Below the pieces are notes generated by a model. It was not told where the DNA came from and searched no databases. It saw only the letters and a list, made by a program, of their open reading frames with translations. Shown in pieces: positions 3,701 to 63,638 of a DNA stretch of 64,000 bases (within the stretch, counting starts at the first letter, position 1; the number at the start of each line of letters is the position of its first letter). The translations under genes and the position numbers were made by a program. The stretch covers positions 1-64,000 of the IMG/VR virus record IMGVR_UViG_3300008111_000002; one strand, written 5' to 3'.

Positions 3701-4447
3701 ACTAAGTCGTCAACTGAAGCTGGATTTATTGACGTACAAGCAATTCAATTGAATAGTAACACTGTATTAGCATACTCAGGTTCAACACTAGTTGTTAAAA
3801 CACCAGGCGGTACTGAACTGATCAGCGGTATAGGTAGTGCAGATAACTCAACTCCTGTGACCTATAAAGGACAGTGGACTCCGGGAACAAATGCAACATT
3901 GGCTGCAACCAGTTCTACAAACGTGGCAATTACTAATGATACAACTTCTGCTACAGCCTATGTAACTTTTGTAACTGCTACTAGTGGTAATCAAGGTGTT
4001 AGAGTTAATTCTAACATGACCTACAATGCCAGTACTAATGTATTAACAACAACAGCAACACAGGCAAGATTTGCTGACTTGGCTGAATATTATACAGCAG
4101 ACAAGGAATACGAACCAGGCACTGTGTTGATATTTGGCGGCACTGCTGAAACTACAACTACAAACGTCTTTGGTGATGCAAGACTAGCAGGTGTTGTTTC
4201 TACTGCTCCAGGCTACTCAATGAATGCTGAACTAGCAGGAACTAGAGCACTAGTAGCACTACAAGGTCGTGTACCATGTAAGGTAGTTGGCCGTGTTAAG
4301 AAAGGTGATATGTTAACCACTGCTGGTATTGTGGGACATGCTGCTAAGGCCATAGATCCAAAAGTTGGAACAATTATTGGTAAAGCACTAGAAGACAAAG
4401 ACTACACCGAAATGGGTGTAATTGAAGTTGCAGTTGGTAGAGTTTAA
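2..4447 (+). CDS. Large tail fibre / receptor-binding protein, 5'-truncated by the window edge
   Basis: The frame is open from base 2, so the GTG at 71 is probably not the start. The protein is Thr/Gly/Ser-rich with repeated FCCH-like modules ([42 protein letters not shown]). The C-terminal [10 protein letters not shown]...[11 protein letters not shown]...IEVAVGR resembles intramolecular-chaperone (peptidase G2-like) tails of phage fibres. Confidence 0.85.
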
Positions 4448-20997: not shown

Positions 20998-21484
20998 ACT
21001 AGGAGCTCACGAAAGTCTCATAACTACCAGCTCAAATTGGGACTTTGACAAAGACGGTAATGCTGAAGAATTTGAAAAATCAATGATTGAATTTATGGTT
21101 GCTAATCACGGAATAGGACTAGCGGCTAATCAAATTGGTATTACTAAGCGAGTATTTGTAATTGGTAGCATTAACATTCCTGGATTTCCAGAACCATTTG
21201 CTGTGTTTAATCCTGTAATTACAGAATACAGCAAAGATCAAAATGTAGATAAAGAAGGTTGCTTAAGTTATCCTAATCTGTGGTTAACTGTTAAACGACC
21301 AGAATGGATTGTTACACAATATCAAGATTCTAAAGGAAACTATCATGAAGTAAAAATAGATGGTTATCTTGCTAGATGTTTTCAACACGAATACGATCAT
21401 CTTAATGGTGTGTGCTTTGTAGACAAAGTATCCCAGATGAAGTTACAATTAGCTATGAAGAAACTAAGGAAACAAAAACAATGA
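20987..21484 (+). CDS. def: Peptide deformylase
   Basis: GIGLAANQIG, EGCLS and QHEYDHLNG motifs are all present. Confidence 0.95.
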   Translation: MEFKLGAHESLITTSSNWDFDKDGNAEEFEKSMIEFMVANHGIGLAANQIGITKRVFVIGSINIPGFPEPFAVFNPVITEYSKDQNVDKEGCLSYPNLWLTVKRPEWIVTQYQDSKGNYHEVKIDGYLARCFQHEYDHLNGVCFVDKVSQMKLQLAMKKLRKQKQ

Positions 21485-47349: not shown

Positions 47350-47801
47350 TGAAAAAATATATTAAAAAAATATTTGGTATTGATAAAATTGAAGAAACCA
47401 AAGCAAAATTAGAAACTGAGAAAGAAGCATTACAAGCTGCAAGAGATAAAGCAGTTGCAGAAACTGTAAAAGCACAAGAAGAAGAAGAACTTGCTAAAAT
47501 AACTCCAAAAGAACGTGCTACTAGAAAAAAAGAACCTTGGGTTGCAGTTTTACAAACACATGTTAATAAAGAAAATTTAAGAAACGGTTTTTTTGAACTT
47601 GACTGGAATGAATACTTTGTTGTACAATTAAAACAACAAGGCTATGGTCTTGACGGTGACCCAGACGAAGAAATTGTAGATCGCTGGTTCCGTGCATTAT
47701 GTAATGATATTGCGGGAGATGAAGGTATTAATATGGATCGTCGCGGTGCAGGTTATATTAATGTTCAACAAATTGGTTCAGGAAAATCTGAGGTTTCATG
47801 A
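47349..47801 (+). CDS. Hypothetical protein
   Basis: Coiled-coil N-terminus, FELDWNEYF motif. Confidence 0.65.
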   Translation: MKKYIKKIFGIDKIEETKAKLETEKEALQAARDKAVAETVKAQEEEELAKITPKERATRKKEPWVAVLQTHVNKENLRNGFFELDWNEYFVVQLKQQGYGLDGDPDEEIVDRWFRALCNDIAGDEGINMDRRGAGYINVQQIGSGKSEVS

Positions 47802-48808
47802 CATATATTCTAGTCGATACGGCTAATACATTTTTTCGTGCTCGTCATGTAATTAATGGCGATACTGATATGAAGCTCGGTATGGCTTTTCATATTACTT
47901 TAAATTCTATTAAAAAAGCATGGAAAGATTTTAATGGATCTCATGTAGTATTTTGTCTCGAAGGACGCAGTTGGCGTAAGGATCACTACGCTCCTTACAA
48001 ACGCAATCGTGCAGAAACTAGGGCTGCTCTTACCCCCTCTCAACAGGAAGAAGATAAACTATTTTGGGAAGCATTTGATACATTTAAAGAGTTTATTACA
48101 GATAAAACTAACTGTACTGTGATGCAACATCCGCAATTGGAAGCTGACGATTTAATTGCTGGTTGGATTCAGAGTCATCCTAATGACGATCATGTTATTA
48201 TTTCAACCGATACTGATTTTGTACAATTAATTGCTTCCAATGTTAAACAATATAACGGAATAACTGAAACAACTATTACACACGAAGGTTATTTTGACGA
48301 CAAGGGAAAATCAGTTATTGATAAAAAAACCAAAGAAGCAAAAGCTGCTCCTGACCCCGAATGGTTATTATTTGAAAAATGTATGCGAGGAGACACTAGT
48401 GATAATATCTTTAGTGCATATCCGGGTGTTCGTGTGAAAGGTACAAAAAATAAAGTTGGTCTTACAGAAGCATTTGCTGATAGAAATAGTAAAGGGTTTA
48501 GTTGGAACAATTTAATGTTGCAACGATGGATTGATCATGAAGGCCAAGAACATCGTGTACTTGATGATTATCAAAGAAATTGTCTGTTAATCGATTTAAG
48601 AAAGCAACCAATTGAGATTAGAGAAATAATTAAAAATACAATTAACGAATCCATATCAGCAAACAAAGATGTTGGACAAGTTGGTATTAAATTATTAAAG
48701 TTTTGCAATCTGTATGACCTAAAAAAGATTTCTGAACAGGCGCAGACTTATGCAGAACCGTTAAATGCAAGATATAAAGCAACAGAACTAATGACAAGGG
48801 AAGTATGA
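47798..48808 (+). CDS. rnh: 5'-3' exonuclease / T4 RNase H-like (FEN family)
   Basis: ILVD, YKRNR, LEADDLIA, ISTDTDFVQL, GDTSDNI. Confidence 0.9.
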   Translation: MTYILVDTANTFFRARHVINGDTDMKLGMAFHITLNSIKKAWKDFNGSHVVFCLEGRSWRKDHYAPYKRNRAETRAALTPSQQEEDKLFWEAFDTFKEFITDKTNCTVMQHPQLEADDLIAGWIQSHPNDDHVIISTDTDFVQLIASNVKQYNGITETTITHEGYFDDKGKSVIDKKTKEAKAAPDPEWLLFEKCMRGDTSDNIFSAYPGVRVKGTKNKVGLTEAFADRNSKGFSWNNLMLQRWIDHEGQEHRVLDDYQRNCLLIDLRKQPIEIREIIKNTINESISANKDVGQVGIKLLKFCNLYDLKKISEQAQTYAEPLNARYKATELMTREV

Positions 48809-51438: not shown

Positions 51439-51736
51439 AAAATTTTTTCGACCGCCAGAAAAAGTTGTTAATGAATGGCCGGAAATTTTTGAGGACATGT
51501 ATATGAGCACCATGCCTCTCTATTATACAAAATCTATGCAGATTAAATTTGATAATGGGAGGATATGGCAGCTCAATATACAAGAGTTAGTAGTTGAACA
51601 TGGTAGTGATGAATTATCTACTAAACTATTAGAAACATTTAAAGAATATCAACAAGACATCACCGGTGTAGATTTTGAAATTGATATCGATAAATTAAAA
51701 AAAGATATTAAAAAATCAATTAAGAAAATTCTTTAA
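51431..51736 (+). CDS. Hypothetical protein
   Basis: Last plus-strand gene; convergent overlap with the island gene. Confidence 0.6.
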   Translation: MPKKFFRPPEKVVNEWPEIFEDMYMSTMPLYYTKSMQIKFDNGRIWQLNIQELVVEHGSDELSTKLLETFKEYQQDITGVDFEIDIDKLKKDIKKSIKKIL

Positions 51737-52925
51737 AATACTTTTTAGTACTAGATACAATTTCATCAAGGTATTGTTTTCTAAAGTCTAATTGTTTATA
51801 AATGTATAAATTATGTTCAACGATTGACAACCATTTGTTATAATATTTTTCTTTATCATCATTTATCCAAGATAAAAAAGATTCGTGAAATTTAGCGAAT
51901 CTTTTTTTATGATCCGCAATATCGTCATAACTTGTATCTATGAAATCAGTTCTAAATCCATAATTTTGTAATTTTTTTAATATTCCAACTTGTCCAAGTA
52001 TAATAAATGGATGTCCCATAGCAATTGGGCGAAATGTTTTTTCTGTTATAAACATTCCCGGATCCTCAAAAAAAGTTTCTGTTGAAACGGTTAAGAATGT
52101 ATTTTCAAAAATACATAAATTACTTTTTCCAGCAAGATGTGCTGTTCTTAATTCTTCTGTCGAAACATCAGCTTCTATTGGATATTGTGTTTTTAAAGTT
52201 TTACTATAAGTTTCCGATGATTCATCTAAAAATGTAGGATTTAATGATTCTAAATTAGTATCAAAAAAAGATCCACCAGAAACGATTCCTCGAGATAGTA
52301 AATTATTTTTTGCTAAAAAATATAAATGATCTGTTCTATGACTTCTGTGCGCCCTGTTTAAGCTATTAAAAAGTTTAGCACGATTCTTTATTGATTTATA
52401 AAAAATAGGATCATATTGTTTTTTCCAAGCCTCTCCAACCCATTCTATACCTTCAATAAATTCTAAAGTTGGTTTTAGATTATTTTGCCGACACCACTTA
52501 TTGTATTGTTCTTTTGCTTTTAAATTTCCAGATACGATTAGTACACTCTTAGAAGGTAATTCTAATTTATCAAAAGATTCTGTCAGGTATCTATAACAAT
52601 CATATTTTGATGTAAAACTATCTCCTTCAACTACAGAAATTATTACGATTCTTAATTTTTTTTGTTTTGTAGCCTCTATCACATGAATCGGAATATTATC
52701 TAAAATTTTAAAACTATCTTGATGTTCGTCTGTACACCAATCATAAGAATGTCTACTAACTTCAATAAAATATATTCCGGGATAATCATAATTTTTACTA
52801 CAAACAAATTCTAATTCAGGATGTGTATTTCTTTTAACAAAATATTCATAAGGTCTGACATTTTTTACCTGATCTATATGAGAAAGATTTATTTCATTCT
52901 GATTATCAAAATAACACTGTATCAT
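51720..52925 (-). CDS. GT10/fucosyltransferase-like GT-B protein, paralog 1
   Basis: FNSLNRAHRSHR, TETFF..FITEKTFRPIAMGHPFIILG, GFRTDFIDTSYD. Confidence 0.55.
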   Translation of the reverse strand: MIQCYFDNQNEINLSHIDQVKNVRPYEYFVKRNTHPELEFVCSKNYDYPGIYFIEVSRHSYDWCTDEHQDSFKILDNIPIHVIEATKQKKLRIVIISVVEGDSFTSKYDCYRYLTESFDKLELPSKSVLIVSGNLKAKEQYNKWCRQNNLKPTLEFIEGIEWVGEAWKKQYDPIFYKSIKNRAKLFNSLNRAHRSHRTDHLYFLAKNNLLSRGIVSGGSFFDTNLESLNPTFLDESSETYSKTLKTQYPIEADVSTEELRTAHLAGKSNLCIFENTFLTVSTETFFEDPGMFITEKTFRPIAMGHPFIILGQVGILKKLQNYGFRTDFIDTSYDDIADHKKRFAKFHESFLSWINDDKEKYYNKWLSIVEHNLYIYKQLDFRKQYLDEIVSSTKKYFKEFS

Positions 52926-53514
52926 ATCCCCTCGCTAGTATCACACCATTATTTTGAGAATAAACAATTCTGTAATTACGACTGACCAGGAACGGCACAA
53001 CAGCAGAGCATTTTCCTATATAAATTCCGCTATGTTCTTGCAACGGTGTATCATCGCAAATAATAATAGACTTATCAGACATATAAGGATAACAATTTAT
53101 CATTTGATTTAAATGTTCTGCTACACAATTAAGATTAGTCCATTCTAAATTAAATTTTTCTCGATATAAATTTTTTAATCCAGTTTCATCTGGTTTCATT
53201 GGACGATGATTCCAATCATAATTATCTAGATATAAAATTTTTATTTTTTTGTTAAGAGTTGGTAAAACTTCCTTGGTCCATTTTGATCCGTCGCTGACCA
53301 CAAAGGTAGTATTTGTTAAATGAGATAAATTATTTCTAGCAGATTCTGATATATCAACACTATAAAAAGGAACGTTAAATTTCTTCGAATGCAAATTAAA
53401 AAATTCAGTAGAACCTTCTCCCCTCTCGCTACCGATTTCTAATATAATGTCTTTATGCTGATCGTATTCAGCATATAGAATGAAGGGAATCGAGTTTTTA
53501 TGAAAGTTTGCCAT
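52906..53514 (-). CDS. Class I SAM-dependent methyltransferase
   Basis: ILEIGSERGEGST, YSVD, ILYLDN, IICDDT. Confidence 0.7.
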   Translation of the reverse strand: MANFHKNSIPFILYAEYDQHKDIILEIGSERGEGSTEFFNLHSKKFNVPFYSVDISESARNNLSHLTNTTFVVSDGSKWTKEVLPTLNKKIKILYLDNYDWNHRPMKPDETGLKNLYREKFNLEWTNLNCVAEHLNQMINCYPYMSDKSIIICDDTPLQEHSGIYIGKCSAVVPFLVSRNYRIVYSQNNGVILARGYDTVLF

Positions 53515-54600
53515 TTAGTAAATCCTTGCTGGGGTCCATTTCATATCTTTTAAAAAAAAGAAAAAATAATCGTCGGTCATTCCGTATAATTTAAAAGGTC
53601 TATCTTCTAACATAAATTTTAATGCCTCTGGAACTATTCTTTGTTTATCATACATAATTTCTATAATTTTAGATTTATTATGAATCAATTTAGGAAGAAG
53701 TTTAAAATACAAATTCTGTAATTCTGGCTCTGATAAATTTATAATCGATCTAATATTTTCAATGATTCCGGAAATTCTATCTTCTAATAAATCGCAATCG
53801 TCAAAACTATAATCAAATATTTCATCATATAATTTCAAATTAAATTTTTTACAAAAATAATCTTTATAAAAATGTTTGCAGCTAAGAACTAAAAAAGGTT
53901 TAAACCAAGCAATACTTCTTAATGTCTTTTCAGTTAAATGAAATCTACCTTCTTCAAACCAAGTTTCGTTAATAATATCAACAAAACAGTTTTCTATACT
54001 TTTGGGTTTTCTAAAATGTTCTGTAGAATCTTTTGAATATAGATCTTCATCCATTCGTATTCTACCATCATAATATCTCCATCTACAATGATGATCTCTT
54101 AATACTTCGTTCGCTCTGGTAAAAGTTACCATACCCTTGTCAATCCATCCCTCTTTAGCTAATGCATCAACCATTTTAATTCTATGTTCTGCAACACGCA
54201 CATTATAACAACTATAATAATATCTAAAATTTCTAGGACCTCGCATATAAGGAACAATCGCTACTCCCTGATCGTATTTTTCAGGAAAAGACATGTTGTT
54301 AATAAATGATGGAAATGCAGTAATAATATTACCATAAGATGTTTCACATTTTACATGAGGGTGCAACCATTTATCTAAATGTGGTGTTACAACATTTATA
54401 ATTTTATTATTTTTGATACACCAATCTTTCAAATGTATAAAAGCATTTCCATATAATTCCTCTATCGCCACTTCTGTTACGCTATGAACAATAATTTTAT
54501 CGGGGTTTATTTCTTCAATTGATTTAGATAAAAATAACCATTCGTCATCTGTACTAGGAAATAATGAATGACAATTTTGAATAATATATGCTTTTATCAT
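53515..54600 (-). CDS. GT10-like GT-B protein, paralog 2
   Basis: YSCYNVRVAEHR, INETWF..HLTEKTLRSIAWFKPFLVL, FDYSFD. Confidence 0.55.
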   Translation of the reverse strand: MIKAYIIQNCHSLFPSTDDEWLFLSKSIEEINPDKIIVHSVTEVAIEELYGNAFIHLKDWCIKNNKIINVVTPHLDKWLHPHVKCETSYGNIITAFPSFINNMSFPEKYDQGVAIVPYMRGPRNFRYYYSCYNVRVAEHRIKMVDALAKEGWIDKGMVTFTRANEVLRDHHCRWRYYDGRIRMDEDLYSKDSTEHFRKPKSIENCFVDIINETWFEEGRFHLTEKTLRSIAWFKPFLVLSCKHFYKDYFCKKFNLKLYDEIFDYSFDDCDLLEDRISGIIENIRSIINLSEPELQNLYFKLLPKLIHNKSKIIEIMYDKQRIVPEALKFMLEDRPFKLYGMTDDYFFFFLKDMKWTPARIY

Positions 54601-55727
54601 GTTATATTAAATACTGGTTCGATTAAATTGTTAATAAATTTTAAATTATTATATTTTGACAAATATAATTTTATATCAGGAGTGAGGTATACAGTGTCTT
54701 TGACATAAACTGTATAATTTTCTTTTAAAAATTTTTCGCACAATTTTAATTGATGACTTTCTTCAAAAATATCAATTCCCTTTTTATATGAAACATATTC
54801 AAAATAAAAAGGAAGACGTTTTATATTTTGTTCTATATAATACTGCTTTAAGAATTCTAAATGATCAAGATTAAAATCGTCTATCATTTTTCCAAAATTA
54901 AAACTATTTCCAGAATCCATTAACGCATTTCCAAATGCTCTATTATCTCTAGGTAAACATGGACCTCCGAATCCAAATCCGTAATTTAAAAAATCATTTC
55001 CTATGCGTCGATCAGTGCCAATTGTTGATAACACGATATCTATTTCAGAGAATAATTTGTTTTTTATTAAATATTGACCAACCAAATTAGCAAAACTTAT
55101 TTTTAAAGTTAAAAACGAATTAATAGCAATCTTTGTAATTTCTGCTGATCTGAAAGACATTGTTTTTACTTCAGAATTAACTTCTTGAAAAGATTTATAT
55201 ACCTTTATTAATTTATTAATCGAATCAATATCTTCTCCGCCGATTAATACTAAATCAGCTTTTTTTAAATCTTGTATGATCGACCCTTGGGCAATAAATT
55301 CTGGATTGTATAACAATGATGCTCCAGTATCTTTTAAAATATTATTAAAAATTTCGCAATCACCCGGATTAACCGTCGATGTAATAACAATAATCTTATT
55401 GAATAAATTTACTTTTTTAAATTCAGAAAATATATTAAAAATAGATGTTACGTCGTATTTTCCGTTATCTAAAGAAGGTGTCGAAACAATAATAAAGATT
55501 ATATCTGATTTATCAATTAATTCTTTGTTATCTGATGTTGCTGATAATTTTTTTGATTCGATGAGGTATTGATTTACAAATGGTTCATTTGAATAAAATT
55601 TTTTATCGTTTAGACTATCGACATAGGACTGATTTATGTCAGAAACAATAACATTAAAACCAGCTCTTTCGATAACGAGAGCCATTGATAATCCTAATTT
55701 TCCTGCACCGATGATACCAACATTCAT
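54597..55727 (-). CDS. ugd: UDP-glucose/GDP-mannose 6-dehydrogenase
   Basis: GIIGAGKLG, FIIVSTP, STVNPG, YNPEFIAQG, AEITKIAINSF, GFGFGGPCLPRD. Confidence 0.85.
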   Translation of the reverse strand: MNVGIIGAGKLGLSMALVIERAGFNVIVSDINQSYVDSLNDKKFYSNEPFVNQYLIESKKLSATSDNKELIDKSDIIFIIVSTPSLDNGKYDVTSIFNIFSEFKKVNLFNKIIVITSTVNPGDCEIFNNILKDTGASLLYNPEFIAQGSIIQDLKKADLVLIGGEDIDSINKLIKVYKSFQEVNSEVKTMSFRSAEITKIAINSFLTLKISFANLVGQYLIKNKLFSEIDIVLSTIGTDRRIGNDFLNYGFGFGGPCLPRDNRAFGNALMDSGNSFNFGKMIDDFNLDHLEFLKQYYIEQNIKRLPFYFEYVSYKKGIDIFEESHQLKLCEKFLKENYTVYVKDTVYLTPDIKLYLSKYNNLKFINNLIEPVFNIT

Positions 55728-55734
55728 AAAAGTT

Positions 55735-56436
55735 TTAATAAAATACTGATTTGTGGGGAGACTCTAAAGGTGTTGAATTGCTCAGATAATAGATCGACAT
55801 TAAATTTTGTCTTTCGATATCCTCGGGGCAAAGTATCGGCTCTGTAAAACCATGAAAAAACTCTTGCTCATATTCCCAAAAAATTAATCTATTGGGTGTT
55901 GGCTCAACTGTTAATAATTTTTCAGTTTTAGAACGATTCCAAAATTCTAACTGTCCGTTCCATTCAGATTTCCATTCTGGATTTGAATAAATTATTAAAT
56001 TGAACGCTCGATTTAATTTTAATGAATTATTCCAATTAAAATCAATATGCAACCCCAATTGAGAATTGCGAGGAGTTGATGTTATGCCTGCTCCTAAATA
56101 ATGAGGATCGGGTATTATTCCTTCAACTCCTGTAATTTTTGTCATCCATGAAATAAAATTATGTCCTGTTAAATTTAACATTATATTCTGCAATATATCT
56201 GAACCGGTAAAATCTCGAGTTTCTTTTCTCGGACCGGAAGTATTGCCAAGATTCTTATGAATCCATTTATCAGCAGGATAGTTTCTTATATCATTACATA
56301 GATTTTTGTATATTTCTTCGGGAAAAAAATTATCAACAATTATATGTTTGATAGGTGAGGACACCTTATACTGATTTGATAAAGATTCAGTAGCATAATA
56401 TTTTTCTAAATTGTTAAAAAAACTGTTAATTTCCAT
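55735..56436 (-). CDS. 2OG-Fe(II) oxygenase
   Basis: IIVDNF, LHIDFN (HxD), GQLEFW, FFHGF, RQNL. Confidence 0.85.
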   Translation of the reverse strand: MEINSFFNNLEKYYATESLSNQYKVSSPIKHIIVDNFFPEEIYKNLCNDIRNYPADKWIHKNLGNTSGPRKETRDFTGSDILQNIMLNLTGHNFISWMTKITGVEGIIPDPHYLGAGITSTPRNSQLGLHIDFNWNNSLKLNRAFNLIIYSNPEWKSEWNGQLEFWNRSKTEKLLTVEPTPNRLIFWEYEQEFFHGFTEPILCPEDIERQNLMSIYYLSNSTPLESPHKSVFY

Positions 56437-57581
56437 TAGAGATATTCATATATAAAATCAAAAGATGCATTAGTAAAAGAAGTTGCTTTTTGTTGCTCTA
56501 ATCTTTGATAATTTCTTTCACATATTTCTTTAATACTATTTAATAGATTATAATATTCAGATGTTGGAAGATGTACTATTCTTTCTACTTCATCAACGAT
56601 CATTTTTAATCTTGTTTGATTATCTTCTTCTTTATCATAATCTTCATTAATAAACTTACCAAAAGTTTCATAGCCCATGGATCTCAGATCTTCTAAAATG
56701 TACGGAGTTCCAAATATAATAAAAGGTTTTTTACATGCTATCGGTTTATAAATTTTTTCAGTTATAAAACTAGGAGCAGCGCCTTTTATATATTTTCCAT
56801 TCATATGGCTCAAAAAAGGATCAAAAAATGTTTCTATTGCAATGTGAAAATCAGAAGAAGCAACTGTAGAATAGGTAATATCTGCCCATTTATTATAAAC
56901 GTTATCGGTAGAATCAATTCTATGGGGTACTTTAAATAACCATTCTAAAATTTTATCAGTAATAGGAATTTTTAATTTTTTTAAATCTTCCATCATATCA
57001 GAAATAGTAAAAACTGTCTTTTCATAAGGATGTATATTATAAAAAGAATATGTAAAATCTTTTATTAAATCCCGTTCTATTAATTCACAATATAACCAAA
57101 GACGCCAATTTCTATAATTTCTACTAAGAACACTAAATTTTGATTTTGATTCAAGATTTAAGGTATCAAGATTTACCTTACTCAGTAAAAAATTAAATGT
57201 TGTAAAATTGATCCCAGATATATTTTGTTCAATTAATTTTTTTTCTAAAAATTGTTTATGAACATCATCTGCTAGCGCAATATAAATTTGTGTTGGATTA
57301 ATATTTCTTGTTTTAATTAATTCGATTACTTCGTTTAAAAAATTATAATTAAACGTTTCTCCGCAATTTTCATGAAATAATTTTGCAGACGGTGTCGTTC
57401 TTAAATGTTCCCAATGTATTTCATCAATGCAATCTTTAAATTTCACACCATGTTGTTGATCATCATAAAAGTGATGATAAAATACATCATCTGATGAAGG
57501 AACCCATGTTTTTAAATTATTAAATTTTTTATGATCAAATTTAATATGATGAAATTTTTCAGTTTTACTGTATATTGGCAT
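56436..57581 (-). CDS. GT10-like GT-B protein, paralog 3
   Basis: FSVLSRNYRNWR, IETFF..FITEKIYKPIACKKPFIIFG, GYETF..INEDYD. Confidence 0.55.
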   Translation of the reverse strand: MPIYSKTEKFHHIKFDHKKFNNLKTWVPSSDDVFYHHFYDDQQHGVKFKDCIDEIHWEHLRTTPSAKLFHENCGETFNYNFLNEVIELIKTRNINPTQIYIALADDVHKQFLEKKLIEQNISGINFTTFNFLLSKVNLDTLNLESKSKFSVLSRNYRNWRLWLYCELIERDLIKDFTYSFYNIHPYEKTVFTISDMMEDLKKLKIPITDKILEWLFKVPHRIDSTDNVYNKWADITYSTVASSDFHIAIETFFDPFLSHMNGKYIKGAAPSFITEKIYKPIACKKPFIIFGTPYILEDLRSMGYETFGKFINEDYDKEEDNQTRLKMIVDEVERIVHLPTSEYYNLLNSIKEICERNYQRLEQQKATSFTNASFDFIYEYL

Positions 57582-58530
57582 TTACTTGTTCCTCAATCCA
57601 TTTATATGTATGGATCAACCCATATTCGAGATCCTCGCTCGGTCTCCATTCTAAAAATTTTTCAATTAAATCGTTATGGCTTGATCGTCCCATAACACCT
57701 ATTGGACCTTCAATATTGTTAATTACAATTTCTTTTTTAGCAATCTTGGCAATTAATAGTGCAAGATCATTAATAGAAATCATTCTTTCGCTTCCTAAAT
57801 TAATTGGAATATTAATATTGCTTTCCATTATTTTCAATAATCCCGTAATGCATTCGTCAATATATAAAAATGTCCTTGTTTGATTTCCAGGACCCCAAAT
57901 ATCAACTATGCCGTTGGTTGACATTGCAACTTTACGAGACAATGCTGCAGGGGCTTTTTCTCTTCCATCATTCCACGCACCGTATGGTCCATAAACATTA
58001 TGTAACCTAACTACTTTTGCATCAATGTTGTAATTTTTTCTATGTGCCAAATAAAGTCTTTCACTGAACAGTTTTTCCCAACCATATTCTGTATCTGGTT
58101 GGGCCGGATATGCAGTATGCTCTTCACATATAGGATTATCGGGATCCTCTTGATTAAATTCTGGATAAACACATGCACTACTTGTATAAAGTATTTTTTT
58201 GATACCTTTTTTAGAAGCTTCATGAATAATATTAAGATTAATCATTGCAGAGTTGTGCATTATATCAGAGTCGTGCTCACCAATTGCAATATAGCCTGTT
58301 CCTCCCATATCTGCAGCCAGTTGATAAATTTCATCGAGATTTTCAGTAATTAAATTTTCTACATTTCTTGTATCTCGCAAATCTCTAATATAAAACTCAT
58401 CTGCTTCTGTTTCTCTAAATTGATGATATTTTAAATCTACACCAATTACATAATGGCCTTGTTTTTTAAGAGCAGATACTAAATGGCCGCCAATAAATCC
58501 CCCGGCGCCGCAAACTAAAATTCTTTTCAT
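57565..58530 (-). CDS. gme: GDP-mannose 3,5-epimerase-like SDR
   Basis: GAGGFIGGHL, QLAADMGG, YTSSACVYP, YGWEKLFSE (YxxxK), GREKAPAALSRK. Confidence 0.85.
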   Translation of the reverse strand: MKRILVCGAGGFIGGHLVSALKKQGHYVIGVDLKYHQFRETEADEFYIRDLRDTRNVENLITENLDEIYQLAADMGGTGYIAIGEHDSDIMHNSAMINLNIIHEASKKGIKKILYTSSACVYPEFNQEDPDNPICEEHTAYPAQPDTEYGWEKLFSERLYLAHRKNYNIDAKVVRLHNVYGPYGAWNDGREKAPAALSRKVAMSTNGIVDIWGPGNQTRTFLYIDECITGLLKIMESNINIPINLGSERMISINDLALLIAKIAKKEIVINNIEGPIGVMGRSSHNDLIEKFLEWRPSEDLEYGLIHTYKWIEEQVNANIQ

Positions 58531-58540
58531 TTTAAGTCCT

Positions 58541-59851
58541 CTAAATTCCGTATGTATTTAAAAGATACTCTACTTCAGGATTTCCCATTGTTAATAAATG
58601 ATTTCGATTAAATTCAAGAGTATCTTTTAATTTATATGTTAAATCAATTAATTTTGATTCTGGCCATTTTGATATGTTTTCTATTAGATTCATAATAAAT
58701 GAAAATCTTTTTTCGTGATCAAGAATATCATCATATGACTCATCCCAAAATTCCGAAAATGTTTTAAATCCCGATTCTTTTAAATGACCCAATGTTCCCG
58801 GAGCAGCAAAAATAATAAACGGTTGCATAAATGCAATTGGTTTATAAGTTTTTTCAGTTATATGTCTTATATTATTAAAAAAATAAGTTTCGGTAACAAT
58901 ATTGATATAACTATTTTTGTAAAAATCATTCACTTCGGATATTTTCTTCTCCATGGGATATTTAGAAAAATCCGGAGTATCTAATGTTAAAGGCAGAAGC
59001 ACCGAAGAATCATAGACAGTATCCATTCCTAAGCCTAGATTCTTATGTAAATTAATAACATGGGAAGCGTTTTCTATAAAAGGGCGGCCCGATTCTGGTT
59101 GATCTTTCGCCATACTCATATAGGTAACTTCTAGCAAATTTCTTTTAAAAAAATCTAGATATACCAACAATCTATGTTCATTATATCTACGATTAAAGCA
59201 TAAAAATTTTTTCTTTCTTGGGCCAGGAACATATGGATCTGTAGATGCTAGTGCATCTCCAACGTCACACCGATCAAATCTAAAAGTCGGAAAATATTCA
59301 ATCTTAATTTCTTCGGGTATGTTATATTGTTTACAAAAATCTTTATAAATTTCTTTTCCGTTTTGACAATTGCTTACATATACAATTTGAGATAATGGAG
59401 CTCCCTTACCTTTAAAATAATCTGTCATTGCTTTTAAAAATTCGTCATACATATATCCTTCATGTAATAATGTTATAAGAATATAACCTTCTTTTTTTAG
59501 AATTTTTTGAGCCACGGTATCACTGATTCTATTATTATCAAGTAATCCGTTTGAATGATGAAAAGCTCCTAAGATGTCTCGATAGTGATAATTAGTAAAA
59601 TTTAATTCATAAAAAAATGGTTCATCTGGAATATTTGATGGAGAACAAATTCTTAAATTTTTTCCAAATTTATTATAGAAATGAGGCCGCTGTCTTAAAT
59701 CTTCTTTATAACCGTACATAGCATAATCAACATTAATAAATGATGATGTCATGAAATCCATCAATGTTGGAACTCTATTATTTGTAAGGGGTCCGTCCGG
59801 ACCAATCCATTCGTACACAAAATTAATTTTTCTATTATTGCTTGCATTCAT
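58541..59851 (-). CDS. GT10-like GT-B protein, paralog 4
   Basis: FLCFNRRYNEHR, INIVTETYF..HITEKTYKPIAFMQPFII, GFKTF..WDESYD. Confidence 0.55.
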   Translation of the reverse strand: MNASNNRKINFVYEWIGPDGPLTNNRVPTLMDFMTSSFINVDYAMYGYKEDLRQRPHFYNKFGKNLRICSPSNIPDEPFFYELNFTNYHYRDILGAFHHSNGLLDNNRISDTVAQKILKKEGYILITLLHEGYMYDEFLKAMTDYFKGKGAPLSQIVYVSNCQNGKEIYKDFCKQYNIPEEIKIEYFPTFRFDRCDVGDALASTDPYVPGPRKKKFLCFNRRYNEHRLLVYLDFFKRNLLEVTYMSMAKDQPESGRPFIENASHVINLHKNLGLGMDTVYDSSVLLPLTLDTPDFSKYPMEKKISEVNDFYKNSYINIVTETYFFNNIRHITEKTYKPIAFMQPFIIFAAPGTLGHLKESGFKTFSEFWDESYDDILDHEKRFSFIMNLIENISKWPESKLIDLTYKLKDTLEFNRNHLLTMGNPEVEYLLNTYGI

Positions 59852-61196
59852 TATAAAACTCTTCTAATAAAGGAAAGGTAGCTATCAAATCTGTTCCTCT
59901 ACGTTTATCATATTCATTAAACCAGTTAAAAAAATCTTTTCTTCCTTCTTTAATTCTGTCTTCAGTATAATTTGTTGTTTCCATATAGTGAACAACACGC
60001 TTAAACTTTTCAAACTCCAATTCTGAAAATTTAGTTCGATCTTTGTCATCCAAATTATTTTTTATAAAATTTAAATGGTTATGCATAAATGGCATGAATT
60101 GATCCTTTGGTAATATATTCATATCATATTGCAAAGGTTCTTTCAAGAACGGGGTATCAAAACGAATACGCTGCCATTTATTTTGTTGGTATCCATTATA
60201 TTTTGTACGCCATTCTAAAATCTTTTTTAACAAACTTTGAAAATTAGTTACTGTTAAGATATTAAATGTTATCATAAACGTAACAGGCAAACTTGTTTTA
60301 GTTAGATATGTGTCTAAGTTACGCTCCCAAATAGACAGATCTAGACCGGTGCGAATGTATTCTGCCTGCGGACCCCAGGTGTCGACACTGGTAAAAATCT
60401 TAAAGTCTTTAATTTTACCGTTGCTGACTAGGTTATTAACCTTTTCAACTAATCTATCAATTAAAATAGGTTTAACACCAAAGTTGCTATTAATGTTTAA
60501 CTCTAAATTAGGCAGTGGATTTTGTTCTAAATCTTCTAATAATTTCCATGTGCTCTGTTGTAGTAATGGTTCGCCGCCAGTTATCCGAAGTATTGTTAAT
60601 GTCTTACGCACCTCCGGCCACCATTCCCACCAAGCAGCAACATAAGGATTAGTTTCTTCTTCGTGTATTCTAAACCAATCGATATCATTGCGATGATTCT
60701 TTACAGTAGTATAAGGACCGTAGTCCTTAATTTCTTTATAATAACTGCTGCTATGTTTAGGATGGCAGTATCCGCATTTAAAATTGCATTCATTTCCAAA
60801 TGAAATTTCTATATATTGCGGATTAACTGGTTTTAAAGGATTAGATTTGATTGCCGCAAATCTTTCATCTGTATAGATGCTGGCATTACGTTCTTTTCTA
60901 TCACTTATATAATCTTCGCCCAATGTTTCGATATTCCAACAATAATTACAGCCACTGGGTTTTTCACCATCTATCATGGCAGCACGTTCTGATAATTTTT
61001 GTTGAGTGTTATGTAATGCGTTTGGATTTAACGCTATTTCTTTTAAAGGTATTGTATGTGGTGGAGGATGATAACAACTGTGTGTTTCACCTGTTTGTAG
61101 ATATATTGTAGTATGATGCCATTTTGCAAGACAAAAAGTAGGACTGATTTCATTCATTATAGGAATGAATTTTTTAATCCTTGTTATATCTTGCAT
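59835..61196 (-). CDS. Radical SAM protein with N-terminal SPASM/twitch-like domain
   Basis: FCLAKWHH..HSCYH..GCNYCW N-domain; ECNFKCGYC (CX3CX2C); ITGGEPLL; INSN. Confidence 0.85.
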   Translation of the reverse strand: MQDITRIKKFIPIMNEISPTFCLAKWHHTTIYLQTGETHSCYHPPPHTIPLKEIALNPNALHNTQQKLSERAAMIDGEKPSGCNYCWNIETLGEDYISDRKERNASIYTDERFAAIKSNPLKPVNPQYIEISFGNECNFKCGYCHPKHSSSYYKEIKDYGPYTTVKNHRNDIDWFRIHEEETNPYVAAWWEWWPEVRKTLTILRITGGEPLLQQSTWKLLEDLEQNPLPNLELNINSNFGVKPILIDRLVEKVNNLVSNGKIKDFKIFTSVDTWGPQAEYIRTGLDLSIWERNLDTYLTKTSLPVTFMITFNILTVTNFQSLLKKILEWRTKYNGYQQNKWQRIRFDTPFLKEPLQYDMNILPKDQFMPFMHNHLNFIKNNLDDKDRTKFSELEFEKFKRVVHYMETTNYTEDRIKEGRKDFFNWFNEYDKRRGTDLIATFPLLEEFYNECKQ

Positions 61197-62253
61197 TAAA
61201 ATGTTCCTTTAACCAATCATAGTCGTTTATCTTTGCTAACTCGCTGGGTGCATTTTGCCATTTTAAACCAAACCATTTTCCAATAGTTGCACCATCTAAG
61301 GCATATTCTCCAAAAGGTTTATCCTCGCCTTTAGTACACCATATGTCTAAACGTTCTTCTGATTCTTTACTTATCTGTCCATGAAGCTTTTTACTGGCCA
61401 ACTTGACACATTCTCTAAATGCTGAACGCCATGTGCTATATGAATCTGTGTTAAAGGCGGTAATGTTACTGACCTGATCCATAGCTTTAAACTTCTTGCT
61501 AATACTAGTTGTCATATCTGGACTGTTAACATCAACTTCTAAGGTTAATTTGGTAGGTAATAATTTAACACCACCATACCCGTACTCTAAATTGTTAATT
61601 GGATTACGACTACGCCATACATGTACAACATCTCTATCATGCTTAGGAACATAGTAGTTTAGTTTAAAATCTTCAATTAACTCTGCATCTGCATCGACTA
61701 CCCAAAACATAGGAGTTGTAGATATCTTTGCTGCTGCTATGTGTGCTTGGTGTATACCTTTAATTCCGTGTATTCTTTTAGCATTAGGGTATAATTGTAA
61801 AAGACTATTATAATTTTTGTCTGCAAATGATTCGTTGTAACTTATAAACACAACATCAGACGGAATCGAATATGTTAGATTAATGTCAATGTCTTTAATT
61901 TTTCCTGTAAAAAATTGATATTGCCATTCCCTATTGGTTATTTGAGTCCCTCTAGGAATGAGATAAACACCTAGATATGTTTTGTTATCTTGTAAAAATC
62001 TGTGTATGTATTCTTTATCCCACTCTGGAACTACATAACTGAAATCGTAATCAATGACACAATCGTCATCAACTATCCATGCAAATTTTGTAAAGGTATG
62101 TGATAATGCTTCTTGTACAGTTGCACGTTTTTGTGCGTGGGGAAATTTATTTTTTAATTGCTGCCATCTTTGATCAGAGGAGGGAGTTCTTTGATCTATA
62201 AAAAATAAATCATACATTTTTAGTTGGGAAATAGTAAGTAGCACAGAGATCAA
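61174..62253 (-). CDS. GT-A-like glycosyltransferase with internal duplication
   Basis: Two related halves (FFID..WIVDDD and FISYNE..WVVDAD) carrying DxD motifs; WRSAFREC. Confidence 0.6.
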   Translation of the reverse strand: MISVLLTISQLKMYDLFFIDQRTPSSDQRWQQLKNKFPHAQKRATVQEALSHTFTKFAWIVDDDCVIDYDFSYVVPEWDKEYIHRFLQDNKTYLGVYLIPRGTQITNREWQYQFFTGKIKDIDINLTYSIPSDVVFISYNESFADKNYNSLLQLYPNAKRIHGIKGIHQAHIAAAKISTTPMFWVVDADAELIEDFKLNYYVPKHDRDVVHVWRSRNPINNLEYGYGGVKLLPTKLTLEVDVNSPDMTTSISKKFKAMDQVSNITAFNTDSYSTWRSAFRECVKLASKKLHGQISKESEERLDIWCTKGEDKPFGEYALDGATIGKWFGLKWQNAPSELAKINDYDWLKEHFNARYNKD

Positions 62254-63103
62254 AAGTTTCTCTGTAAAGATCAGCAGTAAATTTACTTTGTTTTTCGTTT
62301 AACCAAGGCCATTCAAAACCCAACTCTCTATGTATTTTTGTTCCAAGATCTTGAGCATCTTGTTCTACACTATCATGATTAACATTTTCTTCATAGATAT
62401 TTTTTAAGATTTCAAAATCTCTTACATCAACATAGTTCCAGTTTGTACAATTAGTCATCCAGGTTCCCATACGAGCACCCAGAATAGCATACTTTCCGTT
62501 TTCAATATGAGTTCCGACTGTACTCCATATCTTAAGACGGTGTATATTATGCCACCATATTTGTTGTTTGATTTCGGTAGGTTTAACCTTAACACCATCT
62601 TTAAGAGTCATTTTAACTCCTTCGCGGAATCCTGCTCTCCATGCCTGAAATGGGGTGCAATTAATAACACTTTGACTAAAAGAACGAGGATGATTTTTAT
62701 ATCCATCCTCCCAACAAAAATCTACCTGTGCTTGTGGTGTGTCCGCAGCTTCGTGAGTTTTCATATTAAGAATAAAATCTTTGTGCCAGATTTTAAGACC
62801 ACCGTTACCATACCGTAGTCCGTTAACAGAATTTACACCACACCAACCATAGACTCTTATTTTTTCATTCGACATATCTAAATCCATGTCAAAAAAAGTT
62901 GAATCTACTATATTATCTGCGTCGACTGTGATTAACCAGTCTGTTTCTGATTGATCTGCAGCAACTTTATGCGCAGCATCGCTGCCTTTAACTCCGTGTA
63001 CACGTTTAGCCCAAGGTACTTTTGTTAATAAATCTGCATAATTTTTTTCAGCATTTGGTTCATCATAACTGATAAAAACGGTATCAAACTCAATTACTTT
63101 CAT
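62210..63103 (-). CDS. GT-A-like glycosyltransferase, paralog of the adjacent gene
   Basis: FISYDEPNA, RVHGVKG, ITVDAD, WRAGFREG. Confidence 0.6.
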   Translation of the reverse strand: MKVIEFDTVFISYDEPNAEKNYADLLTKVPWAKRVHGVKGSDAAHKVAADQSETDWLITVDADNIVDSTFFDMDLDMSNEKIRVYGWCGVNSVNGLRYGNGGLKIWHKDFILNMKTHEAADTPQAQVDFCWEDGYKNHPRSFSQSVINCTPFQAWRAGFREGVKMTLKDGVKVKPTEIKQQIWWHNIHRLKIWSTVGTHIENGKYAILGARMGTWMTNCTNWNYVDVRDFEILKNIYEENVNHDSVEQDAQDLGTKIHRELGFEWPWLNEKQSKFTADLYRETFDLCATYYFPTKNV

Positions 63104-63119
63104 TTTACCCCAATCTTAA

Positions 63120-63638
63120 TTAGAGTAAAGGAATCCAAAGAAGGAATCCTTGAGTTGCTAAAAGTGTAGCAAACCCCCCTAAAGATATTCCAATCCAATA
63201 CATACGTATACTAAATGTTAGCATAGAAGCTGCTAAAATAACAATAGCAATTTGATAGAATGCGTTAGCATATGTATACCAGGGGCTTCTTTTTTCTGCC
63301 ACTGCTCTTTCTGCTTCAATGGCTCTTGCTTTAGTCATTAATTCTTTTTTACCTTCCCCCGTTTTAGGATCAGATTCATATCTTTCAATTTTTTCTTTTA
63401 ATTTTTCTGCTTTTTTAGTTTCTTTTCTAAACACAGCATCATCATATGCAATTTCAGCTAACGATTGTTTTACAGATTTTGCTTGATAAAAAGACCAAAT
63501 GTTATTTGATTCGATTGTATTATTTAAAATTTGAGAAGAATTATCACCGTCTAATAAAGATGTTATAGCTAATAGTGCTGCTAATACTGTTATTATCCAA
63601 CCAGTGCGCTCTTTGATTTGTTCTTTATTGTCACTCAT
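63120..63638 (-). CDS. DUF4337-like membrane protein
   Basis: N-terminal TM, NNIWSFYQAKSVK motif, coiled coil, two C-terminal TMs. Confidence 0.7.
   Translation of the reverse strand: MSDNKEQIKERTGWIITVLAALLAITSLLDGDNSSQILNNTIESNNIWSFYQAKSVKQSLAEIAYDDAVFRKETKKAEKLKEKIERYESDPKTGEGKKELMTKARAIEAERAVAEKRSPWYTYANAFYQIAIVILAASMLTFSIRMYWIGISLGGFATLLATQGFLLWIPLL

What the first reader, a model, noticed from the sequence alone, without database searches (positions are those of the whole stretch)
56436..59851. GDP-mannose 3,5-epimerase flanked by fucosyltransferase-like genes: possible L-galactose transfer
Seen: a GME-type SDR directly between two ITEK-motif proteins. Established: GME makes GDP-L-galactose and GDP-L-gulose; GT10 enzymes have a (Y)ITEK motif and use GDP-L-fucose (6-deoxy-L-galactose), tolerating C6 variants. 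Inference: the paralogs transfer L-galactose, or a uronic/methylated derivative made by the neighbouring dehydrogenase and methyltransferase, which is a rare sugar for a phage.
Basis: partly seen in the sequence, partly recalled or inferred. Interest (0 to 1): 0.6.

Follow-up and report, generated by a model that had tools for sequence, protein, structure and literature searches.

The report
Phage L-galactose epimerase with new glycosyltransferases
An uncultivated freshwater jumbo phage carries an operon in which a genuine GDP-mannose 3,5-epimerase sits between two members of a very large, unannotated, virus-dominated glycosyltransferase family that other phages fuse to the same epimerase, so the phage probably builds an L-galactose-containing glycan, but with enzymes that are not family-10 fucosyltransferases.

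Summary
On the minus strand, 58541-59851 (436 aa, HITEK), 57565-58530 (321 aa SDR) and 56436-57581 (381 aa, FITEK) are adjacent, overlapping genes.

The SDR is a GDP-mannose 3,5-epimerase: 300 bits to Arabidopsis GME against 89 for the next family, with all four catalytic residues kept.

Both ITEK proteins fold as GT-B glycosyltransferases (pLDDT 86 and 92) and are paralogs (E 8e-19).

The family has at least 13,247 50%-identity clusters, no Pfam, NCBIfam or annotated PHROG model, and no tblastn hit from either paralog in 50,697 isolated-phage records.

The link to GME is strong: 28 of 30 viral loci with an ortholog carry GME, and fusions exist in both orientations. The other two paralogs abut a nucleotide-sugar dehydrogenase and a methyltransferase, pairs that are also fused elsewhere.

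Donor use is inferred and the acceptor is unknown. No operon protein through 63103 has a membrane segment.

The parts
58541..59851 (-). P0003: ITEK-family GT-B glycosyltransferase (436 aa), upstream neighbour of GME
58850..58861 (-). ITEK motif of P0003 (residues 331-334), start of a helix in the C-terminal domain
   Evidence: T332, E333 and K334 are nearly invariant in 100 diverse members. In the model, strand 314-320 is followed by helix 333-340 and strand 345-348.
57565..58530 (-). P0002: GDP-mannose 3,5-epimerase (321 aa)
   Evidence: PDB 2c59 E 1.8e-88, 300 bits; 8sg0 E 3.5e-84; next family 89 bits. C120, Y149, K153 and K192 align with AtGME C145, Y174, K178 and K217. Pfam Epimerase E 6e-44.
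56436..57581 (-). P0001: ITEK-family GT-B glycosyltransferase (381 aa), downstream neighbour of GME
   Evidence: AF2 pLDDT 92.3, pTM 0.89. GT-B matches. TM 0.86 and rmsd 2.8 A over 365 residues to a 90-member cluster of 705-aa phage proteins that carry the Epimerase domain. 45% identical over its full length to the C-terminal half of the L012 GME fusion.
56754..56765 (-). ITEK motif of P0001 (residues 273-276)
   Evidence: nearly invariant columns T274, E275, K276.
55735..56436 (-). 2OG-Fe(II) oxygenase of the prolyl-hydroxylase type (233 aa)
   Evidence: PF13640 E 2.3e-12. Its nearest solved relatives are prolyl hydroxylases, weakly: OGFOD1 E 9e-4 and HIF-PHD E 0.31. It is kept in the closer relatives' clusters.
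54597..55727 (-). Nucleotide-sugar 6-dehydrogenase (376 aa), directly upstream of the third paralog
   Evidence: TIGR03026 213.7 bits, above its cut-off. It is closer to UDP-glucose dehydrogenases (119 bits) than to GDP-mannose dehydrogenase (78 bits). It is absent from relatives L005-L007. In viral loci, 23 of 31 homologous dehydrogenase genes abut an ITEK gene.
53515..54600 (-). P0163: third ITEK paralog (361 aa, HLTEK at 221-225)
   Evidence: The match is mainly to the C-terminal domain (E 2.7e-15 to the family profile).
52906..53514 (-). Methyltransferase-like protein (202 aa), directly upstream of the fourth paralog
   Evidence: Weak PF13578 match, E 0.003. Orthologs are kept in relatives. 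Methyltransferase::ITEK fusions exist: P0256, P0264, P0278 and an Atlas cluster.
51720..52925 (-). P0162: fourth ITEK paralog (401 aa, FITEK at 292-296), last gene of the operon
   Evidence: 33% identity to P0003, E 1.6e-18. E 3e-34 to the family profile.
59835..61196 (-). Twitch-domain radical SAM protein (453 aa), directly upstream of P0003
   Evidence: NF033640 320 bits, cut-off 170. A homolog of at least 270 bits lies within 8 kb of an ITEK gene in 53 of 80 viral loci. No solved relative.
61174..62253 (-). P0164: GT-A-like protein with a D-A-D motif (359 aa)
   Evidence: Weak PF00535 match, E 1e-4. Paralog of P0165, 34% identity, E 5e-29. It co-occurs with the radical SAM gene in viral loci.
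62210..63103 (-). P0165: GT-A-like paralog (297 aa)
   Evidence: No Pfam hit.

Best explanation
The region is the core of a tightly packed minus-strand phage operon, at least 51720-63103. Its products through 63103 have no predicted membrane segment, so it looks like a soluble glycan-building machine.

Shown:
- P0002 is a GDP-mannose 3,5-epimerase.
- P0003, P0001, P0163 and P0162 are four paralogs of a very large, virus-dominated GT-B family that no profile library names.
- The family's conserved residues all lie in the C-terminal, donor-binding domain. In P0003 numbering they are R221/R227, E321, T332-E333-K334, K337, P344-F345, E371-x-Y373-D374, R382 and N415.

Inferred:
- P0003 and P0001 take that product as donor, possibly by direct hand-over, since other phages make each of them as one polypeptide with GME.
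- The dehydrogenase + P0163 pair and the methyltransferase + P0162 pair are further 'sugar modifier + transferase' modules that add a uronic acid and a methylated residue.
- The two GT-A-like proteins, the radical SAM enzyme and the prolyl-hydroxylase-like oxygenase complete or prepare the glycan or its acceptor.
- By analogy with GT10, the R...E...TEK...P series would hold the diphosphate and the sugar of the donor. This is resemblance in working, not family membership.

The acceptor is unknown. The operon has no flippase, polymerase or polyprenyl-phosphate transferase. My best guess is therefore a protein made during infection, perhaps a virion fibre, possibly through a hydroxylated residue.
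For: **GME**
- 300 bits against 89 for the next family, with the catalytic C/Y/K/K kept.

**GT-B fold**
-.

**Paralogy and copy number**
- exactly four copies in the 210-kb record, all in this operon.

**Coupling to GME**
- A GME of at least 260 bits lies next to the P0003 ortholog in 28 of 30 viral loci. The two exceptions are cut by contig ends.
- GME::ITEK fusions of 710-714 aa occur in L012, L014 and L017.
- ITEK::GME fusions occur in L028 and P0282. The GME part of P0282 is 53% identical to P0002 and matches PDB 8sg0 at E 4e-93.
- An Atlas cluster of 90 phage fusion proteins matches the P0001 model at TM 0.86.

**Modularity**
- Dehydrogenase::ITEK fusions: L033, and the top BFVD hit A0A6J5TB28.
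- 23 of 31 viral dehydrogenase genes abut an ITEK gene.
- Methyltransferase::ITEK fusions.
- A Bacteroidota homolog sits beside a dehydrogenase in a polysaccharide locus.

**General precedent that GME pairs with fucosyltransferase-type enzymes**
- A CPR genome has GT10, then GME, then GT11.
- Cyanophage S-SCSM1 (PMC9602691).

**Substrate supply and location**
- No membrane segments in the operon proteins through 63103.
- No sugar nucleotidyltransferase in the record, so GDP-mannose must come from the host.

**Persistence in nature**
- The locus is kept intact, with mostly transition differences, in several independent freshwater and lagoon metagenomes.
Against: - No activity has been measured. 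The donor is inferred only from gene neighbourhood and fusions.
- GME is tied to only one branch of the family: 1 of 50 more distant ITEK loci has it. The fold and motif therefore do not themselves specify GDP-L-galactose.
- No conserved acidic residue stands out in the N-terminal domain as a catalytic base, so the stereochemistry is open.
- Profile comparison with GT10 is negative. The mechanistic analogy rests on fold, residue order and my recollection of the H. pylori FucT active site.
- Nothing in the data identifies an acceptor.
- The genome record is only about 60% complete, so the absences I report are provisional.
Confidence: 0.6

Rival explanations
1. The ITEK proteins are divergent GT10 alpha-1,3/4-fucosyltransferases whose natural donor is GDP-L-fucose, and L-galactose is only tolerated.
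For: - A (Y/I)TEK word at the start of a C-domain helix, preceded by an E-(N/T) strand end. The order R...E...TEK...P matches the GT10 invariants R145, E189-N190, T198-E199-K200 and P211 of alignment A4.
- The nearest Pfam-bearing Atlas clusters are GT10, but at a score of 0.79, which the tool calls a lead only.
- With a single GT10 sequence, hhalign lays TEK on TEK, at E 0.12.
Against: - No PF00852 or PF18025 hit for any of 44 members, nor in the genome at E<=10.
- hhalign of the family against a 25-sequence GT10 profile gives 0.19% probability, and the TEK words are not even aligned.
- GT10 is tied with GT4, GT63, GT47, GT90 and other GT-B families in the structure searches, and is absent from the top Foldseek rows.
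- The E-to-T spacing is 11 residues here against 9 in GT10.
- The 210-kb record has no GDP-mannose 4,6-dehydratase or GDP-fucose synthase.
Confidence: 0.07
2. The transferases act on phage DNA. They would be a DNA-hypermodification system like the T4 glucosyltransferases, attaching sugars to modified bases to evade restriction.
For: - All operon proteins through 63103 lack predicted membrane segments.
- The operon lies beside replication genes: an exonuclease at 47798-48808, and dCMP deaminase in relatives.
- A radical SAM enzyme and an oxygenase could prepare a base.
Against: - No thymidylate-synthase-family hydroxymethylase (ThyA or ThyX type) is found in the 210-kb record, which is incomplete.
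- To my knowledge, known DNA glycosyltransferases use UDP-sugars, not GDP-L-sugars.
- Up to six transferases plus methylation and oxidation suggest an oligosaccharide.
- The one bacterial homolog examined lies in a polysaccharide locus.
Confidence: 0.07
3. The operon remodels the host cell surface (lipopolysaccharide, capsule or S-layer glycan) during infection, as proposed for the 'LPS genes' of cyanophages. It would use host lipid-linked intermediates as acceptors rather than phage proteins. The donor chemistry is the same as in the best explanation.
For: - Cyanophage precedent and the usual interpretation (PMC9602691).
- A Bacteroidota homolog sits in a chromosomal polysaccharide locus with an ABC transporter, a GT4 and a carbamoyltransferase.
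- Bacterial GME loci are surface-glycan loci.
Against: - The operon has no priming transferase, flippase, polymerase or any membrane protein through 63103.
- The family is almost confined to viruses: 1 of 401 Bacteroidota genomes searched, and Atlas clusters are 96-100% viral.
- The operon continues a same-strand block that begins with tail-fibre-like genes.
Confidence: 0.2
4. The fusion reflects co-regulation only. GME supplies a different enzyme, for example the GT-A-like P0164/P0165, while the ITEK proteins use common UDP-sugars.
For: - Most ITEK loci lack GME.
- The nearest Foldseek structures are UDP-sugar-using GT4 and GT20 enzymes.
- P0164 and P0165 are also conserved nearby.
Against: - Fusions in both orientations, involving exactly the two flanking subfamilies.
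- A 90-member fusion cluster.
- GME follows the P0003 subfamily rather than P0164/P0165, which occur widely without it.
Confidence: 0.12

Closest known systems
GDP-mannose 3,5-epimerase (plant GME, PDB 2c59; bacterial GM35E; the annotated GME ORF123 of cyanophage S-SCSM1)
   Same: - Full-length similarity, E 1.8e-88.
- An NAD-binding glycine motif at residues 8-14.
- Catalytic Cys, Tyr, Lys and Lys all conserved.
- A phage-borne copy next to fucosyltransferase-type genes has already been described (PMC9602691).
   Different: - About 55 residues shorter than the plant enzyme: 321 aa here against a 379-residue PDB chain.
- Here, and in relatives, it is flanked by or fused to an unclassified transferase family rather than GT10, GT11 or GT23.
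CAZy family GT10 alpha-1,3/4-fucosyltransferases (H. pylori FucT 5zoi, human FUT9 8d0o)
   Same: - A TEK word opening a C-domain helix after an E-containing strand end.
- The same order of conserved Arg, Glu, Thr-Glu-Lys and Pro.
- A likely GDP-beta-L-hexose donor.
   Different: - No Pfam GT10 or FucT_N match.
- Profile-profile probability 0.19%.
- Different motif spacing.
- A long insertion between the Arg and Glu positions.
- An extra conserved E-x-Y-D...R...N block in the C-terminal helices.
- GT10 is not distinguishable from other GT-B families by structure score.
Virus-encoded autonomous glycosylation machinery of chloroviruses and mimiviruses (for example PBCV-1 A064R and A111/114R, multidomain transferase + methyltransferase proteins; PMC9614988, PMC7826918)
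   Same: - Soluble, virus-encoded transferases.
- Fusions of transferase domains with methyltransferase domains.
- Rare and methylated sugars.
- No use of a host membrane pathway.
- Relatives of the ITEK fold occur in a Mimivirus-like genome.
   Different: - This is a tailed phage of bacteria.
- The acceptor has not been shown to be a capsid protein.
Mycobacteriophage virion glycosylation (Freeman et al. 2023, cited in PMC12619734)
   Same: Phage-encoded glycosyltransferases that decorate the phage's own structural proteins. This is the acceptor class I favour.
   Different: - Those enzymes belong to annotated GT families.
- No GME or L-galactose is known there.
- No homolog of the ITEK proteins was found in any of 50,697 isolated-phage records.

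Membership tests
GDP-mannose 3,5-epimerase (extended SDR) | Full-length sequence similarity to biochemically characterised GMEs, clearly above other SDR sugar enzymes | tested here: met
   2c59 scores 300 bits (E 1.8e-88) and 8sg0 scores 286 bits. The next family, UDP-glucuronate decarboxylase, scores 89.6 bits.
GDP-mannose 3,5-epimerase (extended SDR) | Catalytic Tyr-x3-Lys plus the Cys/Lys acid-base pair (AtGME C145, Y174, K178, K217) | tested here: met
   C120, Y149, K153 and K192 align to them and were verified in the translation. The chain numbering of 2c59 is offset by +2.
GDP-mannose 3,5-epimerase (extended SDR) | [quoted passage not shown] | not testable with these tools
   This needs an enzyme assay.
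GT-B fold glycosyltransferases | Two Rossmann-like domains, with conserved donor-binding residues in the C-terminal domain | tested here: met
   [not shown]
CAZy GT10 (alpha-1,3/4-fucosyltransferase) | Match to Pfam PF00852 (Glyco_transf_10) and/or PF18025 (FucT_N) | tested here: not met
   No hit for the two proteins, for 44 family members at E<=1, or in the whole 210-kb record at E<=10. A real GT10, L091:6809-7861, scores 59 and 99 bits.
CAZy GT10 (alpha-1,3/4-fucosyltransferase) | Profile-profile homology to GT10 sequences | tested here: not met
   hhalign of A1 against A4 (25 GT10 sequences) gives probability 0.19% and E 0.31. A1 against A3 gives 0.09%.
CAZy GT10 (alpha-1,3/4-fucosyltransferase) | The alpha-1,3-FucT motif F-x-x-x-F-E-N-S-x4-Y-x-T-E-K | tested here: inconclusive
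   The family has E-T-x-F ... (I/L)-T-E-K with 11 residues from E to T. The GT10s fetched here have 9. The Asn-Ser and Tyr positions are not kept.
CAZy GT10 (alpha-1,3/4-fucosyltransferase) | Structure closer to GT10 than to other GT-B families | tested here: not met
   [not shown]
CAZy GT4 (retaining GT-B, E-x7-E) | Pfam Glycos_transf_1 match and a second Glu eight residues after the first | tested here: not met
   No PF00534 hit. Residues 333-341 of P0003 contain no second Glu.
Phage DNA glucosyltransferases (GT63 / T4 AGT type) | Phage makes a hydroxymethylated pyrimidine as acceptor | tested here: inconclusive
   No ThyA- or ThyX-family gene in the record, but the record is about 60% complete.

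The most novel reading that the evidence does not exclude
The ITEK proteins represent a new, essentially virus-specific glycosyltransferase superfamily. It is repeatedly welded to the enzyme that makes or tailors its sugar: GME, a nucleotide-sugar dehydrogenase or a methyltransferase. In this jumbo phage, four of them, with a prolyl-hydroxylase-like oxygenase and a radical SAM enzyme, would assemble in the cytoplasm an L-galactose-, uronate- and methyl-sugar-containing glycan on a hydroxylated residue of a virion fibre. That would be a bacterial-virus counterpart of the autonomous glycosylation of giant viruses.
Probability: 0.2. Interest if true: 0.75.

Novelty: new variant of a known kind. 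Interest (0 to 1): 0.55.

Why it matters
- **A large unannotated family.** If the inference holds, a family of more than ten thousand sequence clusters, now labelled 'hypothetical' in aquatic viromes, becomes readable as glycosyltransferases.
- **Donors predictable from context.** Their donors could be guessed from the fused or adjacent enzyme.
- **Enzymes for a scarce sugar.** The family would supply natural single-chain 'make-and-transfer' enzymes for L-galactose. Few transferases for this sugar are known, and its activated donor is hard to obtain.
- **Phage biology.** It would show that large freshwater phages invest about 12 kb in building a complex glycan of their own. That bears on host recognition, defence evasion and virion stability.
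- **The ordinary part.** The GME itself is ordinary and has already been seen in cyanophages.

Tried and rejected
- **GT10 membership** was tested and rejected. I tried the Pfam scan, then hhalign with one GT10 sequence, six and twenty-five.
- **GT11 and GT4** from the same CPR locus used as hhalign targets gave nothing.
- **PDB sequence searches** with single proteins and with the family profile gave only chance-level hits.
- **tblastn of both proteins** against 50,697 phage records found no match. The tool may leave out the window's own genome.
No complex prediction exists, and I claim no binding beyond what the fusions imply.
- **ITEK homologs next to bacterial GMEs:** none in 9 loci.
- **The 'moraphage' paper** (PMC12619734) mentions four core glycosyltransferase orthogroups. 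I could not link that lineage to this genome and make no such claim.
- **RNA evidence:** one 166-nt contig from a freshwater metatranscriptome lies in P0003 (59226-59391). It is too little to call transcription.

Full report
**1. The observation**

The stretch 56436-59851 holds three adjacent minus-strand genes:
- P0003, 58541-59851, 436 aa
- P0002, 57565-58530, 321 aa
- P0001, 56436-57581, 381 aa

They belong to a run of genes from 51720 to beyond 63103 whose neighbours overlap or are at most 16 nt apart. G+C in this run falls to 28-30%, against 33-43% in the rest of the window. P0003 carries HITEK at residues 330-334 and P0001 carries FITEK at 272-276. The two proteins are paralogs: 26% identity over about 300 residues, E 8e-19.

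**2. The epimerase**

P0002 matches Arabidopsis GDP-mannose 3,5-epimerase over its whole length (2c59, E 1.8e-88, 300 bits) and a second solved GME (8sg0, 286 bits). The next family reaches only 89 bits. In the printed alignment the four catalytic residues of the plant enzyme are matched by C120, Y149, K153 and K192, which I verified in the translation. From my knowledge of Major et al. 2005, these are C145, Y174, K178 and K217; the K178R mutant chain 2c54 confirms the register. NCBIfam's nearest model, GDP-fucose synthase, scores far below its cut-off. This is a GME.

The 210-kb genome record has no sugar nucleotidyltransferase and no GDP-mannose dehydratase. The substrate must therefore come from the host, and GDP-fucose is not made by the held part of the genome.

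**3. The ITEK proteins**

*No named family.* Pfam, NCBIfam and PHROGs give no meaningful hit. Sequence searches of the PDB give nothing either.

*Many uncharacterised relatives.* Word-based homology searches found more than 1000 relatives of P0003 and 39 of P0001, none with a Pfam domain.

There are exactly four copies in 210 kb, all in this operon.

**4. Are they GT10 fucosyltransferases?**

I tested this in four ways.

(a) The Pfam GT10 models hit none of 44 family members, and nothing in the genome at E<=10.

One came from a CPR bacterium (L091:6809-7861, FucT_N 99 bits plus Glyco_transf_10 59 bits). Five came from Bacteroidota, and there were many close CPR homologs. hhalign of the ITEK family against a 25-sequence GT10 profile gave 0.19% probability and did not align the TEK words. 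With a single GT10 sequence the TEK words were aligned, but at E 0.12.

(d) The motif is only similar. The family has E-T-x-F, then 11 residues on, (I/L)-T-E-K. GT10 has E-N-S, then 9 residues on, T-E-K.

Membership in GT10 is therefore not supported.

What remains is a resemblance in layout. In 100 diverse members the invariant or nearly invariant positions are R221, R227, E321, T332, E333, K334, K337, P344, F345, E371, Y373, D374, R382 and N415, all in the C-terminal domain. The order Arg...Glu...Thr-Glu-Lys...Pro is also the order of the GT10 invariants in my alignment. In H. pylori FucT the corresponding Arg and Lys hold the diphosphate and the Glu contacts the fucose. That point is from memory and was not tested here.

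**5. Size and range of the family**

A profile search of 1.84 billion representatives found 13,247 clusters at E<=1e-3 and 3,235 at E<=1e-30. Several lines show the family is mainly viral:
- Atlas clusters are 96-100% viral.
- BFVD hits are 'uncultured Caudovirales phage' proteins plus one Mimivirus-like protein.
- Only 1 of 401 Bacteroidota genomes searched has a homolog.
- tblastn of both proteins against 50,697 isolated-phage records found nothing.

This is a large, virus-dominated and unannotated family.

**6. The link to GME**

Among 80 viral loci, the 30 that carry a P0003 ortholog have a GME-grade neighbour (at least 260 bits) in 28 cases. The other two are cut off by contig ends. One of the 28 is the window's own phage and two are duplicates of each other.

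Relatives at 52-65% identity keep this order: radical SAM, GT, (methyltransferase), GME, GT, oxygenase, methyltransferase-like protein, GT.

Natural fusions occur in both orientations:
- GME at the N-terminus of a P0001-type transferase: L012, L014 and L017 at 710-714 aa, and L013, which is truncated.
- A P0003-type transferase in front of GME: L028, and P0282 at 755 aa.

The GME half of P0282 is 53% identical to P0002 and matches solved GMEs at E 4e-93. The P0001 model superposes at TM 0.86 (rmsd 2.8 A, 365 residues) on a 90-member Atlas cluster of 705-aa phage proteins carrying the Epimerase domain. This is classic fusion evidence that both flanking transferases work with GME.

The tie belongs to this branch only. 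Of 50 more distant ITEK loci, one has GME.

**7. A modular operon**

The other two paralogs each follow a different enzyme. The nucleotide-sugar dehydrogenase (54597-55727) overlaps the start of P0163 by 4 nt. The methyltransferase-like gene (52906-53514) overlaps P0162 by 20 nt.

Both pairings recur elsewhere:
- In viral loci, 23 of 31 homologous dehydrogenase genes abut an ITEK gene on the same strand, and one locus (L033) has them fused.
- The best BFVD match of the P0001 model is a 788-aa dehydrogenase-containing phage protein.
- Methyltransferase::ITEK fusions exist: P0256, P0264 and P0278 and an Atlas cluster.
- The single Bacteroidota homolog sits directly beside a dehydrogenase in a polysaccharide locus.

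The dehydrogenase is nearer to UDP-glucose dehydrogenases than to GDP-mannose dehydrogenase. Together with P0163 it is missing from relatives L005-L007. I therefore read the operon as three 'modifier + transferase' modules, rather than as one pathway that oxidises and methylates L-galactose.

**8. Other members and the acceptor**

Upstream in the same operon lie:
- a twitch-domain radical SAM protein (NF033640, 320 bits), which accompanies ITEK genes in 53 of 80 viral loci;
- two GT-A-like paralogs with a D-A-D motif.

Between P0001 and the dehydrogenase lies a 2OG-Fe(II) oxygenase of the PF13640 type. Its nearest solved relatives, weakly, are prolyl hydroxylases.

No operon protein through 63103 has a hydrophobic segment typical of a membrane span. 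There is also no flippase, polymerase or priming transferase. This argues against a self-contained O-antigen-type pathway and fits cytoplasmic glycosylation of a protein.

The same-strand block continues upstream, outside the window, to fibre-like proteins. That is only a lead.

DNA as acceptor cannot be excluded. It is disfavoured by the absence of a hydroxymethylase gene in the held record and by the number and variety of the enzymes.

**9. Context**

- The DNA polymerase (33309-35975) is closest to those of jumbo phages Phosso, Atu_ph07 and the large E. coli myoviruses, at 43-50% identity.
- The record is 210 kb and estimated to be 60% complete.
- Near-identical copies of the locus occur in lake, freshwater and lagoon metagenomes from many studies.
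- Two independent contigs span it with mainly transition differences and no frame break in the GME or transferase genes.
- GME next to fucosyltransferase-type genes is not new in itself. It is annotated in cyanophage S-SCSM1 (PMC9602691), and I found GT10, then GME, then GT11 in a CPR genome.

**10. Verdict**

L-galactose (or L-gulose) transfer by the flanking enzymes is the best-supported reading, at about 0.6. The enzymes are a new GT-B family, not GT10. The dehydrogenase and methyltransferase probably serve their own paralogs.

Noticed in passing
window 59835-61196 (-) and viral loci L009-L088: A twitch-domain radical SAM protein (NF033640, 320 bits) lies directly upstream of P0003. A homolog of at least 270 bits accompanies ITEK transferases in 53 of 80 viral loci, far more widely than GME does. 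Its substrate is unknown and it has no solved relative.
   Followed up: partly
window 61174-62253 (-) and 62210-63103 (-): Two paralogous proteins (34% identity, E 5e-29) have a D-A-D motif and only a weak GT2 match. They travel with the radical SAM gene in many viral loci and are probably GT-A transferases of another unannotated family.
   Followed up: partly
window 52000-60000: G+C falls to 28-30% across the sugar operon, against 33-43% elsewhere in the window. The strand skews also reverse. This is consistent with the opposite gene orientation and possibly with foreign origin.
   Followed up: no
G000:C1:167234-169035 (outside the window; L111:296-2097): The same phage has a second sugar cluster: a PseB/FnlA-like UDP-GlcNAc 4,6-dehydratase (328 bits) followed by an RmlD-like reductase. 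This suggests a 2-acetamido-2,6-dideoxy-L-hexose pathway.
   Followed up: partly
window 71-4447 (+) and G000:C1:68332-70191 (-) (L104:5332-7191): The 1458-aa tail-fibre-like protein in the window has a C-terminal domain matching phrog_22593 and phrog_19602. The ortholog, in relative L005, of the 619-aa protein that heads the same-strand block upstream of the sugar operon matches the same two families. These are candidate glycan acceptors.
   Followed up: partly
window 63120-63638 (-): A 172-aa DUF4337 protein (E 8e-31) lies just upstream of the sugar genes. It has the only strongly hydrophobic segment in the block (residues about 126-144).
   Followed up: no
L091:6809-11824 (Candidatus Magasanikbacteria MAG): A bacterial GME is fused to an Acyl_transf_3 domain (715 aa). 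A true GT10 and a GT4-like gene lie upstream and a GT11 lies downstream. This is a bacterial locus where L-galactose or L-gulose transfer by fucosyltransferase families could be tested.
   Followed up: partly
L114:8258-11176 (Bacteroidota genome G084): This is the only ITEK homolog among 401 Bacteroidota genomes searched (577 aa). It sits beside a nucleotide-sugar dehydrogenase in a locus with a GT4, a carbamoyltransferase, an ABC transporter, GDSL esterases and a PhyH dioxygenase.
   Followed up: partly
window 21412-23781 (+), 33309-35975 (+): A 789-aa ATP-dependent protease homolog (phrog_4871, E 2e-252) and a family-B DNA polymerase are present. The polymerase is nearest to those of jumbo phages Phosso and Atu_ph07 (46-50% identity). 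The record is judged 60% complete at 210 kb, so this is probably a jumbo phage.
   Followed up: partly
window 59226-59391: A 166-nt contig from a freshwater metatranscriptome library matches P0003 without any difference. It may be transcript or carried-over DNA.
   Followed up: partly
The search of protein representatives list, e.g. P0168, P0169, P0234, P0276: Many family members are 740-1018 aa long, have two ITEK-domain matches and no Pfam domain. They are tandem double transferases.
   Followed up: partly
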